From contig NC_068985.1 of the NCBI RefSeq assembly GCF_001194135.2, positions 29,633,211 through 29,697,210 of the forward strand: a stretch of DNA of 64,000 nucleotides. Direction: 5' to 3'. How positions within the stretch are numbered: the first letter of the stretch is position 1; each line of letters opens with the position of its first letter. The position numbers were made by a program, and so were the translations under genes. A model generated the notes under the pieces. That model ran no database searches. It was not told where the DNA came from and saw only the letters and a program-made list of their open reading frames with translations. This DNA comes from Octopus bimaculoides (taxonomy: Eukaryota). Shown here one piece after another: positions 19,723 through 20,065 of the stretch.

Positions 19723-19812
19723 TGATGCCGATGTTGTTGAAGAAAACCGACTTGCAAAACCGTTAATTTTCCAAGATTGGGTTGTGAGGAAAATAGGAGC
19801 AAATCATAGATA

Positions 19813-19998
19813 GGTACTACTAAAGCAGCACGGTCCCGAACGCGCAGTCGCGCTAGTAGTCGTGATTGGTCGATCCTAACCCTAACCCTAAACACGTATT
19901 CATTTGCACACGCGGGTTAGGGTTAGGATCGACCACTCACGATTAGCTAGCGCGGACGCGCGACTGCGCGTTCGGGACCGTGCTGCTTTCGTAGTACC
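19813..19998. mobile_element. 186-bp fold-back MITE with telomeric repeats, 8-bp TSD and GG termini (Merlin-like)
   Basis: Arms 19813-19888 and 19914-19998 (GGTACTAC[T/G]AAAGCAGCACGGTCCCGAACGCGCAGTCGCGC...GATCCTAACCCTAACCC). Exact TSD CATAGATA at 19805-19812 and 19999-20006. The superfamily assignment rests on GG ends plus an 8-bp TSD. Confidence 0.85.
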
Positions 19999-20065
19999 CA
20001 TAGATATATATTAACCAACCAACACTGAGCAAACCAGCTATTTCTTTTAAATATTTCGTTTTTCA

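What the first reader, a model, noticed from the sequence alone, without database searches (positions are those of the whole stretch)
19805..20006. Merlin-like fold-back MITE carrying inverted telomeric repeats
This 186-bp element is almost entirely a palindrome (76/85-bp arms, 25-bp spacer). It starts and ends with GG/CC and has a perfect 8-bp TSD (CATAGATA). GG termini with 8-9-bp TSDs are the signature of the Merlin (IS1016-related) superfamily. The inner arm ends are telomeric: CCTAACCCTAACCCTAA on the left and GGGTTAGGGTTAGG on the right, the TTAGGG repeat used by molluscs. The element is GC/CpG-rich and looks young. It sits ~70 bp from a candidate promoter, so it could disperse telomere-protein (TRF-like) binding sites, a cruciform and a mini CpG island into regulatory DNA. 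I do not recognise it as a described family.
Basis: partly seen in the sequence, partly recalled or inferred. Interest (0 to 1): 0.8.

Follow-up and report, generated by a model that had tools for sequence, protein, structure and literature searches.

The report
Octopus Merlin MITE with telomere repeats
This is a 186-bp non-coding "jumping gene" remnant of the Merlin family in the Octopus bimaculoides genome, an ordinary kind of element whose only oddity is a pair of mirrored telomere-type repeats that its relatives lack.

Summary
Window 19813-19998 is a 186-bp near-palindrome (GGTACTAC...GTAGTACC). It has arms of 76 and 85 nt, a 25-nt spacer and a perfect 8-bp target-site duplication (CATAGATA). 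CCTAACCCTAACCCTAA and GGGTTAGGGTTAGG sit at the inner arm ends. The element is 56% GC with CpG o/e 1.55, against 35% and 0.37 for the window.

The window comes from Octopus bimaculoides chromosome CM046605.1.

In O. sinensis, a 2.3-kb element encodes a DDE_Tnp_IS1595 (Merlin) transposase. Its ~75-nt terminal inverted repeats align with the window arms from the GG terminus to GTCGATCCTA (76-83% identity). O. bimaculoides locus L017 holds two more degenerate relatives. One of them joins such arms to the 3' internal region of that Merlin family.

Another octopus Merlin family shows GG termini and 8-bp duplications at four insertion sites.

None of the five related ends carries the telomeric hexamers, so they are specific to this copy or sublineage.

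Genome-wide copy number, Repbase/Dfam status, promoter proximity and TRF binding could not be tested.

Verdict: a new member of a known kind, of modest interest.

The parts
19805..19812 (.). Left copy of the 8-bp target-site duplication, CATAGATA
   Evidence: (family D4). It is identical to 19999-20006 and cannot be extended on either side.
19813..19888 (+). Left arm / terminal inverted repeat (GGTACTACTAAAGCAGCACGGTCCCGAACGCGCAGTCGCGCTAGTAGTCGTGATTGGTCGATCCTAACCCTAACCC)
   Evidence: Inverted repeats I1 and I2. Homologous to the O. sinensis Merlin TIRs in L019 (83% and 76.5% identity) and to L017 12475-12534 (90%).
19875..19891 (+). C-strand telomeric repeat CCTAACCCTAACCCTAA at the inner edge of the left arm
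   Evidence: Absent at the equivalent position of the L017 and L019 relatives.
19889..19913 (+). 25-nt non-palindromic spacer. Its 22-nt core ACACGTATTCATTTGCACACGC is homologous, in reverse complement, to the sequence just inside the L017 12475 arm.
   Evidence: GCGTGTGCAAATGAATACGTG in the window against GCGCGTATGCAAATTAGTACAC in L017.
19914..19927 (+). G-strand telomeric repeat GGGTTAGGGTTAGG at the inner edge of the right arm
19914..19998 (-). Right arm / terminal inverted repeat. Its reverse complement is GGTACTACGAAAGCAGCACGGTCCCGAACGCGCAGTCGCGCGTCCGCGCTAGCTAATCGTGAGTGGTCGATCCTAACCCTAACCC.
   Evidence: BLAST of window 19924-19998 against L019 9490-9415 gives 76% over 76 nt, E 2.6e-10. 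It is 90% identical to L017 12475-12534.
19999..20006 (.). Right copy of the 8-bp target-site duplication, CATAGATA

Best explanation
The feature is a non-autonomous, fold-back (almost all-TIR) member of a Merlin (IS1016/IS1595-related) DNA transposon family of octopuses. It is inserted in an intergenic, microsatellite-rich stretch of O. bimaculoides chromosome CM046605.1.

It has no coding capacity. Its two ~75-nt arms are the family's terminal inverted repeats. They would be bound and cut by a DDE_Tnp_IS1595 transposase supplied in trans by an autonomous copy of the P0004/P0016 type. Reintegration at staggered cuts 8 bp apart then produced the CATAGATA duplication.

Shown here:
- the anatomy of the element;
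- the 8-bp TSD;
- TIR homology to a transposase-bearing Merlin element;
- the existence of other family members, including an internal-deletion derivative;
- an intact D-D-E triad in the O. bimaculoides transposase P0004.

Inferred:
- mobilisation in trans;
- recent insertion, from the perfect TSD and undecayed CpGs;
- that the telomeric hexamers are a passenger acquisition at the inner TIR edges with no demonstrated role.
For: 1. Superfamily signature. The termini are 5'-GG...CC-3' and the TSD is a perfect 8 bp. Merlin is defined by TIRs of 24-462 bp with a conserved terminal GG and 8-9-bp TSDs (PMC8101967; PMC10045372).

2. The same signature in authentic octopus Merlins. An 8.7-kb element carries the D-D-E-intact transposase P0077. 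It occurs at three sites (L014, L015, L016) at 99-99.6% identity, with termini GGCGATG.../...CATGCC and perfect 8-bp TSDs GCAAATCT, CAAGGCTT and GAAACTTT.

3. The partner.
- In O. sinensis locus L019, the PF12762 transposase gene (P0016; ORF 9905-10858) is bracketed by inverted repeats at 9415-9493 and about 11675-11751.
- These repeats align with the window arms from the GG terminus to GTCGATCCTA. BLAST gives E 2.6e-10, and identity is 76-83% over 66-75 nt.
- Further subterminal inverted pairs (I2, I4) surround the ORF symmetrically, so the ORF belongs to that element.

4. O. bimaculoides has the orthologous transposase. P0004 is 82% identical to P0016 in protein and in DNA over 789 nt, and keeps IVEIDES / IISDLW / NHIESLW.

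5. More family members in O. bimaculoides.
- L017 12475-12563 has the same terminus GGTACTACTAAAG, the same arm (90% identity) and the same spacer core.
- L017 13314-13529 has two inverted arms (97% over 34 nt) around a 121-bp block. That block is 99% identical to the stretch 98 bp downstream of P0004's stop codon, and homologous to the L019 element's 3' interior. This is a classic internal-deletion derivative.

6. Octopus bimaculoides has the largest reported Merlin transposase complement among protostomes (191 sequences; PMC8101967).
Against: - No intact autonomous copy with GGTACTAC TIRs was recovered from O. bimaculoides itself. The P0004 copy in L013 is 5'-truncated and has no recognisable TIRs. 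Other O. bimaculoides Merlin proteins were not on record for look-up.
- The O. sinensis partner has no preserved TSD (TTAACAAG against GGCTTTGG). It is also interrupted by a nested MITE.
- The L017 relatives are degenerate and lack TSDs.
- Genome-wide copy number is unknown. No eukaryotic DNA collection could be scanned. The viral, metagenome and prokaryote scans gave nothing or only 21-22-nt chance hits. A six-frame peptide search of the protein database found nothing.
- Only this one copy is known to carry the telomeric repeats.
Confidence: 0.87

Rival explanations
1. It is a MITE of another superfamily that also makes about 8-bp duplications (hAT, Mutator/Foldback, P/Galileo), not Merlin.
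For: hAT also makes 8-bp TSDs. Mutator-like elements make 4-10-bp TSDs (PMC10045372). hAT and Mutator families outnumber Merlin among recently active families in O. vulgaris (PMC13282606). Long fold-back TIRs are known in FB/Mutator and Galileo elements (titles).
Against: The arms are homologous along their whole length to the TIRs that bracket a PF12762 Merlin transposase gene. The termini are GG. That differs from the hAT YARNG or P CA... motifs, which I cite from established knowledge and did not re-derive here. No hAT, MULE or P transposase is associated with these TIRs in any locus fetched.
Confidence: 0.03
2. It is Merlin-derived but arose by hairpin-primed fold-back copying of a single transposon end (TIR + telomere hexamers + 22-nt subterminal core). 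This would replace the usual internal deletion that keeps both ends. It would explain why the telomeric hexamers are mirrored on both arms.
For: The hexamers lie beyond the ancestral TIR edge yet occur on both arms. The unique core is only 22-25 nt, a typical hairpin loop size. The core is homologous to the sequence next to only one arm in the L017 12475 copy. This is a question about origin and is compatible with the best explanation for how the element moves.
Against: The arms differ by an 8-nt indel located where the two O. sinensis TIRs also differ by 8 nt. This hints that the arms descend from two different ends. However, both arms of the L017 deletion derivative carry the 8 nt, so the hint is weak. 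No intermediate half-element carrying the hexamers is known.
Confidence: 0.2
3. It is an exapted regulatory or telomere-protein-binding module (paired TRF-type sites, cruciform, mini CpG island).
For: There are two to three exact TTAGGG units on each arm. CpG o/e is unusually high at 1.55, against 0.37 for the window. The cruciform or hairpin potential is very strong.
Against: The hexamers are absent from all related ends, so they are not a conserved feature. The CpG-rich core (CGCG...TAGCTAG...TCGTGA) is conserved in the O. sinensis transposon TIRs, so it is explained by transposon ancestry. No gene, TSS or conservation evidence exists for this site. Rfam finds nothing in the window.
Confidence: 0.05
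4. It is not a mobile element at all, but a local palindromic duplication or an assembly artefact in a draft, gap-rich scaffold.
For: The window holds 2,745 N bases and many microsatellites. Palindromes can be created by assembly errors.
Against: The 8-bp direct repeat sits exactly at the ends of the inverted repeat. Related sequences with the same terminus occur on another chromosome and in another species, next to a transposase. The arms are imperfect (indels and substitutions), unlike a fold-back assembly artefact.
Confidence: 0.02

Closest known systems
Merlin superfamily DNA transposons and their MITE-like non-autonomous derivatives (Feschotte 2004; IS1016 group of the IS1595 family)
   Same: 5'-GG termini and an 8-bp TSD. 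TIR length lies within the 24-462-bp range. The TIRs are homologous to those of an element encoding a DDE_Tnp_IS1595 transposase. The element is short and non-coding.
   Different: Almost the whole element is TIR, giving a fold-back with a 25-nt hinge. The inner TIR edges carry exact telomeric hexamers that the related ends lack.
Octopus Merlin family with GGCGATGTTTCG termini (L014-L016 8.7-kb element; nested 472-bp MITE in L019 10778-11249)
   Same: Same superfamily, same hosts, GG termini, 8-bp TSDs and long TIRs (44 to about 354 nt). It also has its own MITE.
   Different: There is no TIR sequence similarity beyond GG. The transposase (P0077/P0137) is only about 40% identical to P0004/P0016.
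Drosophila Foldback (FB) / Mutator-Foldback elements and Galileo (P superfamily)
   Same: Fold-back architecture with long inverted arms and little unique sequence.
   Different: Those elements have 9-bp (FB) or 7-bp (Galileo) TSDs. Their arms are built of tandem subrepeats, and they use MULE-type or P-type transposases. Here the arms are simple and Merlin-homologous.
Short interstitial telomeric sequences inserted at double-strand-break repair sites (primates, rodents, horse; PMC7215372)
   Same: A few exact TTAGGG units are present in one paralogue. They replace a few bases that are present in ITS-less relatives.
   Different: Here the repeats are mirrored on two arms of a transposon. Their polarity does not fit telomerase extension of the TIR-bearing halves. 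No orthologous ITS-less site was available.
Telomere-bearing transposons of ciliates (TBE1/Tel-1/Tlr; recalled from knowledge, not tested)
   Same: Transposon inverted repeats contain the host's telomeric repeat.
   Different: In ciliates the repeats are at the outer tips, and the elements are Tc1/mariner-like and linked to genome rearrangement. Here they are at the inner TIR edge of a Merlin MITE.

Membership tests
Merlin superfamily (eukaryotic IS1016/IS1595-related DNA transposons) | Target-site duplication of 8 (or 9) bp | tested here: met
   Perfect 8-bp CATAGATA on both sides, not extendable. The definition comes from PMC8101967 and PMC10045372.
Merlin superfamily (eukaryotic IS1016/IS1595-related DNA transposons) | Terminal inverted repeats beginning with a conserved 5'-GG, 24-462 bp long | tested here: met
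   GGTACTAC.../...GTAGTACC, with arms of 76 and 85 nt. The GG rule is stated in PMC8101967.
Merlin superfamily (eukaryotic IS1016/IS1595-related DNA transposons) | For a non-autonomous element, TIRs shared with an element encoding a DDE_Tnp_IS1595 (PF12762) transposase | tested here: met
   O. sinensis L019 has TIRs at 9415-9493 and about 11675-11751 around the PF12762 ORF 9905-10858. They are 76-83% identical to the window arms, E 2.6e-10. In O. bimaculoides itself only a TIR-less copy of the orthologous transposase (P0004) and a deletion derivative with arms (L017 13314-13529) were found.
Merlin superfamily (eukaryotic IS1016/IS1595-related DNA transposons) | Source transposase with an intact D-D-E catalytic triad available in the same genome | tested here: inconclusive
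   P0004 keeps IVEIDES / IISDLW / NHIESLW, but its genomic copy lacks TIRs and is 5'-truncated upstream of the ORF. No activity data exist.
MITE (miniature inverted-repeat transposable element) | Short (<~800 bp), non-coding, with TIRs and a TSD | tested here: met
   The element is 186 bp. The longest stop-free stretch is 36 codons. TIRs and TSD are as above.
MITE (miniature inverted-repeat transposable element) | Multiple, usually many, dispersed copies | tested here: inconclusive
   One copy lies in the window. Two related degenerate copies lie in L017 on another chromosome. A genome-wide count is not possible with these tools.
hAT superfamily | 8-bp TSD with TIRs starting YARNG, and partner hAT transposase | tested here: not met
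   The TSD length fits, but the termini are GGTAC and the homologous TIRs bracket a Merlin transposase, not a hAT one. The YARNG rule is from established knowledge.
Foldback / Mutator-like elements | 9-bp (4-10-bp) TSD, arms made of tandem subrepeats, MULE-type transposase | tested here: not met
   The arms have no internal tandem subrepeats apart from the 2.3-2.8 hexamers. The partner transposase is PF12762.
Short interstitial telomeric sequence inserted during break repair | Exact telomeric units present where related or orthologous sequence lacks them, replacing zero to a few bases | tested here: inconclusive
   Paralogue comparison: GTCGATC|CTAACCCTAACCC|GCGTGTGC in the window against GTCGATC|TTACAAGT|GCGCGTATGC in L017. 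Only paralogues were available, not an orthologous empty site, and the polarity is unusual (note).

The most novel reading that the evidence does not exclude
The telomeric hexamers may not be a private accident. They could define an amplified O. bimaculoides sublineage of this Merlin MITE, or of its autonomous master, whose TIR inner edges carry host telomere repeats.

Such a sublineage would seed paired, inverted TRF-type binding sites and short interstitial telomeric sequences across the genome. It might also record a telomerase-linked repair step in MITE birth.

Several unrelated octopus inverted repeats with telomere-like centres hint that 'telomere repeat at a fold-back hinge' is recurrent in octopus DNA. 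Examples are L013 5565-6294, L019 about 7200-7560 and window 21099-21193.
Probability: 0.12. Interest if true: 0.5.

Novelty: new member of a known kind. Interest (0 to 1): 0.3.

Why it matters
The finding adds a concrete MITE-and-partner pair to the large but poorly described Merlin complement of octopus genomes. It also gives clean 8-bp TSD evidence for Merlin activity in this lineage. That helps repeat annotation of cephalopod genomes, in which TEs make up most of the DNA.

The telomeric hexamers would matter only if they prove to be a feature of an amplified sublineage. In that case the element would be a documented route by which interstitial telomeric sites spread in an invertebrate genome. 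As it stands it is an ordinary transposon relic with a curious passenger motif.

Tried and rejected
- Exact-pattern scans for the TIR core. The viral scan found nothing. The metagenome scan gave 3 hits and the prokaryote genome scan 8 hits. All 11 are 21-22-nt chance matches in GC-rich bacteria. No eukaryotic DNA collection is available.
- Six-frame peptide search of the element against 5.8 billion proteins, to catch copies inside spurious ORFs. Nothing scored E <= 1.
- Look-ups of spurious ORFs next to or overlapping the element, to obtain allelic or empty sites. They were not on record.
- tblastn of Merlin transposases against the window found nothing.
- Rfam scan of the whole window found no family, so the hairpin is not a known RNA gene.
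- Look-ups of further O. bimaculoides Merlin proteins (P0010, P0039). They were not on record.
- ENA contig L018 with a Merlin transposase showed no similarity to the element.
- Yuan & Wessler 2011 (superfamily TIR/TSD table) is not held. The hAT and P terminal motifs are therefore cited from knowledge only.
- An empty-site search with the joined flanks in all fetched loci found only the window itself.
- Simple telomerase healing of broken TIR halves was rejected, because the strand polarity of the hexamers is wrong for it (sequence logic, note).
- L/R ancestry of the arms was not inferred from the shared 8-nt indel position, because both arms of the L017 derivative carry the 8 nt.

Full report
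**Observation**

- Window 19813-19998 is a 186-bp element that starts GGTACTAC and ends GTAGTACC.
- It is flanked by a perfect 8-bp direct repeat, CATAGATA (19805-19812 and 19999-20006). The repeat cannot be extended on either side, which fixes the boundaries.
- The arms are 76 and 85 nt. They are 95.7% identical over 69 aligned positions, plus an 8-nt (GTCCGCGC) and a 1-nt indel. The spacer is 25 nt.
- The inner arm ends read CCTAACCCTAACCCTAA (19875-19891) and GGGTTAGGGTTAGG (19914-19927). No such 14-mer is expected by chance in shuffles.
- As single-stranded DNA it folds at -89 kcal/mol, z = -20 against shuffles.
- It is 56% GC with CpG o/e 1.55, in a window of 35% GC and CpG o/e 0.37.
- Only one copy lies in the window.
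- TTAGGG is the only experimentally determined cephalopod telomere motif (PMC13218726).

**Source**

An exact look-up of the zinc-finger ORF at 61982-63961 places the window on Octopus bimaculoides GCA_001194135.2, chromosome CM046605.1, at about 29.62-29.69 Mb. The window is draft-quality, with 2,745 N bases, many microsatellites and two C2H2 zinc-finger ORFs. No annotated gene or TSS information exists near the element, so the 'candidate promoter ~70 bp away' cannot be assessed.

**Finding relatives**

No eukaryotic DNA collection can be scanned with these tools.
- The viral scan found nothing. The metagenome and prokaryote scans gave only 21-22-nt chance hits in GC-rich bacteria.
- A six-frame peptide search found nothing.

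I therefore went through the transposase. PMC8101967 defines Merlin as having TIRs of 24-462 bp with a conserved terminal GG and 8-9-bp TSDs. It reports 191 Merlin transposase-like proteins in O. bimaculoides, the most of any protostome. I took one of these (KOF79200.1) from its supplement. With it I retrieved octopus Merlin proteins and fetched their genomic loci.

**What authentic octopus Merlins look like**

Three loci share an 8.7-kb element at 99-99.6% identity: O. sinensis L014 and L016, and O. vulgaris L015. It encodes the D-D-E-intact transposase P0077 and has ~354-bp TIRs. The termini are GGCGATGTTTCG.../...CGAAACTATGCC. Perfect 8-bp TSDs occur at all three sites: GCAAATCT, CAAGGCTT and GAAACTTT.

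A 472-bp MITE of that family, with 44-nt perfect TIRs, is nested in L019 at 10778-11249. Its TSD is CAAAAGAG/CAGAAGAG. The homologous O. bimaculoides sequence in L013 shows the empty site AACAAAAGAGAAAATGG.

GG termini plus 8-bp TSDs are therefore the working signature of Merlin in these genomes, as in the window element. The TIR sequence of this family is unrelated to GGTACTAC.

**The partner**

In O. sinensis locus L019 a PF12762 transposase gene (P0016; ORF 9905-10858, cut short by the nested MITE) lies between two inverted repeats.
- Left end, 9415-9493: GGTACTATTTAAGAAGAGTGGTCCCGGTGCGCGCACTCGCGTATCGGTGCTAGCTAGTCGTGACTAGTCGATCCTA.
- Right end, about 11675-11751, in reverse complement: GGTGCTACTTGAGAACAATGGTCACGGTGCGCGCACTCGCGTTAGCTAGTTTTCATAATTAGTCGATCCTTAC.

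The window arms align with these from the GG terminus to GTCGATCCTA.
- BLAST of 19924-19998 against 9490-9415 gives 76% over 76 nt, E 2.6e-10. A second hit falls on the right end.
- Global identities are 76-83%.

The element is 2,337 bp, or 1,865 bp without the nested MITE, which is a normal Merlin size. It has further symmetric subterminal inverted pairs around the ORF, so the ORF is the element's own.

O. bimaculoides has the orthologous transposase, P0004 in L013. It is 82% identical to P0016 in protein, and 82% in DNA over 789 nt, with the catalytic motifs IVEIDES, IISDLW and NHIESLW intact. That copy has lost its 5' region and has no recognisable TIRs.

**More members in O. bimaculoides**

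Locus L017 (chromosome CM046614.1) was fetched for a different Merlin gene, P0137. It contains two relatives of the window element.

1. L017 12475-12563 reads GGTACTACTAAAG, then the arm (90% identity to the window arms, but lacking about 20 nt), then the same spacer core (GCGCGTATGCAAATTAGTACAC against GCGTGTGCAAATGAATACGTG).
2. L017 13314-13529 has two inverted arms (97% over 34 nt) around a 121-bp AT-rich block.
   - The block is 99% identical to L013 4154-4274, the stretch that starts 98 bp after P0004's stop codon.
   - It is homologous to the L019 element's 3' interior.
   - That is the anatomy of an internal-deletion derivative of this Merlin family.

Both L017 copies have decayed termini and no TSD.

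**Mechanism**

The best-supported account is ordinary cut-and-paste. The arms are the transposase-binding TIRs. A P0004/P0016-type DDE transposase acts in trans. Integration at 8-bp staggered cuts gave the CATAGATA duplication.

The perfect TSD and the retention of 23 CpGs in a CpG-depleted neighbourhood suggest a fairly recent insertion. However, the CpG-rich core (CGCG...TAGCTAG...TCGTGA) is conserved in the O. sinensis TIRs. GC and CpG richness is therefore inherited from the family and is not, by itself, evidence of youth or of a CpG-island function.

Rivals from other superfamilies (hAT, Mutator/Foldback, P) are excluded by the TIR homology. An artefact or a purely local palindrome is excluded by the TSD and by the dispersed relatives.

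**The telomeric hexamers**

None of the five related ends carries them. Those ends are the two L019 TIRs, L017 12475 and both arms of the L017 derivative. After GTCGATC they read CTACAACG, CTTACTTTG and TTACAAGT; the left arm of the L017 derivative reads CTATTATT (its right arm diverges from the alignment just before this motif). The window arms read CTAACCCTAACCC(TAA).

Compared with the L017 12475 copy, 13 nt of telomere repeat replace 8 nt exactly between the TIR edge and the shared spacer core.

On each strand the G-rich repeat runs 5'->3' outward from the 22-nt core. This polarity is wrong for telomerase healing of the two TIR-bearing halves. It would fit extension of the core's 3' ends.

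Four origins remain possible:
- hexamer duplication seeded by GATCCTAAC;
- a progenitor whose TIRs already carried the repeat;
- local arm-to-arm conversion;
- hairpin-primed fold-back of one end.

An 8-nt indel between the window arms lies where the O. sinensis TIRs also differ by 8 nt. However, both arms of the L017 derivative keep the 8 nt, so this does not settle the question.

ITS insertion at repaired breaks is documented in mammals (PMC7215372), but I could only compare paralogues. The idea that the family disperses TRF sites is therefore unsupported at present. It depends on a genome-wide census that I could not run.

**Comparison with known elements, and novelty**

The element meets every Merlin criterion I could test: TSD length, GG termini, and TIRs shared with a PF12762 element. 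It also meets the structural MITE criteria. Copy number is untested.

It is not a Drosophila-type Foldback or a Galileo element, because the TSD, arm structure and transposase all differ. Merlin MITEs and the richness of Merlin in O. bimaculoides are already known (PMC8101967). O. vulgaris repeat annotation also lists Merlin and MITE families (PMC13282606). Whether this particular family is in Repbase or Dfam could not be checked.

I rate it a new member of a known kind, with the mirrored telomeric hexamers as an unexplained lineage-specific curiosity. Interest is about 0.3.

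Noticed in passing
L019 10778-11249 (O. sinensis), empty site at L013 3990-4010: A 472-bp Merlin MITE of the other octopus family (44-nt perfect TIRs GGGCGATGTTTCGC...) is inserted in the 3' part of the P0016 Merlin transposase ORF. Its 8-bp TSD is CAAAAGAG/CAGAAGAG. The homologous O. bimaculoides sequence shows the unoccupied site.
   Followed up: yes
L014 4265-12996, L016 4252-12997, L015 about 3886-12941: An unusually large (8.7 kb) Merlin-transposase-bearing element has ~354-bp TIRs and perfect 8-bp TSDs. 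Its copies are 99-99.6% identical within O. sinensis and between O. sinensis and O. vulgaris, so it looks recently active. I did not examine what fills the extra ~6 kb.
   Followed up: partly
L013 5565-6294: An AT-rich fold-back (three arm pairs, 76-93% complementary) has a centre of degenerate telomere-like repeats in head-to-head orientation: (TTAGGG-like)n then (CCCTAA-like)n. It is unrelated in sequence to the window element and shows no clean TSD.
   Followed up: partly
L019 about 7200-7560 (ITS 7399-7490): A ~90-bp degenerate (TTAGGG)n tract lies between short inverted repeats (CAAAAATCGGGATTTTGAAATT / AATTTCAAAATTCCGATTTTTG). Its degenerate units resemble those in the L013 fold-back (GGGTTTTAGAGTTAGGGTT), which suggests a shared repeat family.
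   Followed up: no
window 21099-21193: A 28-nt inverted repeat (86% complementary) has TTTAGGGTTAGGGTTACG in its 39-nt loop. It lies next to SINE-like 'TTCTGAGTTCAAATC' sequence. It is the second perfect two-unit telomere hit in the window.
   Followed up: partly
L017 10001-10921 (P0137): This O. bimaculoides Merlin transposase homologue has VVELLES where its O. sinensis/O. vulgaris relative P0077 has VVEIDES. The first catalytic Asp is lost, so the copy is probably inactive. Its genomic copy also lacks the family's TIRs.
   Followed up: partly
window 19500-19710 and 20178-20295: The element sits between trinucleotide microsatellites that are inverted relative to each other: (AGT/GGT)n upstream and (ACT/GCT)n downstream, with (GCC/ACC)n and (GAT)n blocks. 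They form a loose larger palindrome around the insertion.
   Followed up: no
window 2331-3719 (+) and 61982-63961 (+): Two long multi-finger C2H2 zinc-finger ORFs (462 and 659 aa) lie here. The second is an exact match to an annotated O. bimaculoides gene. The window lies in one of the octopus ZNF-rich regions.
   Followed up: partly
L018 4891-5787 (-) and 7465-8406 (+): An ENA metagenome-assembly contig of unknown host carries a mariner-type transposase (HTH_48/Transposase_1) next to a Merlin transposase that is 52% identical to P0137. It has no similarity to the window element.
   Followed up: no
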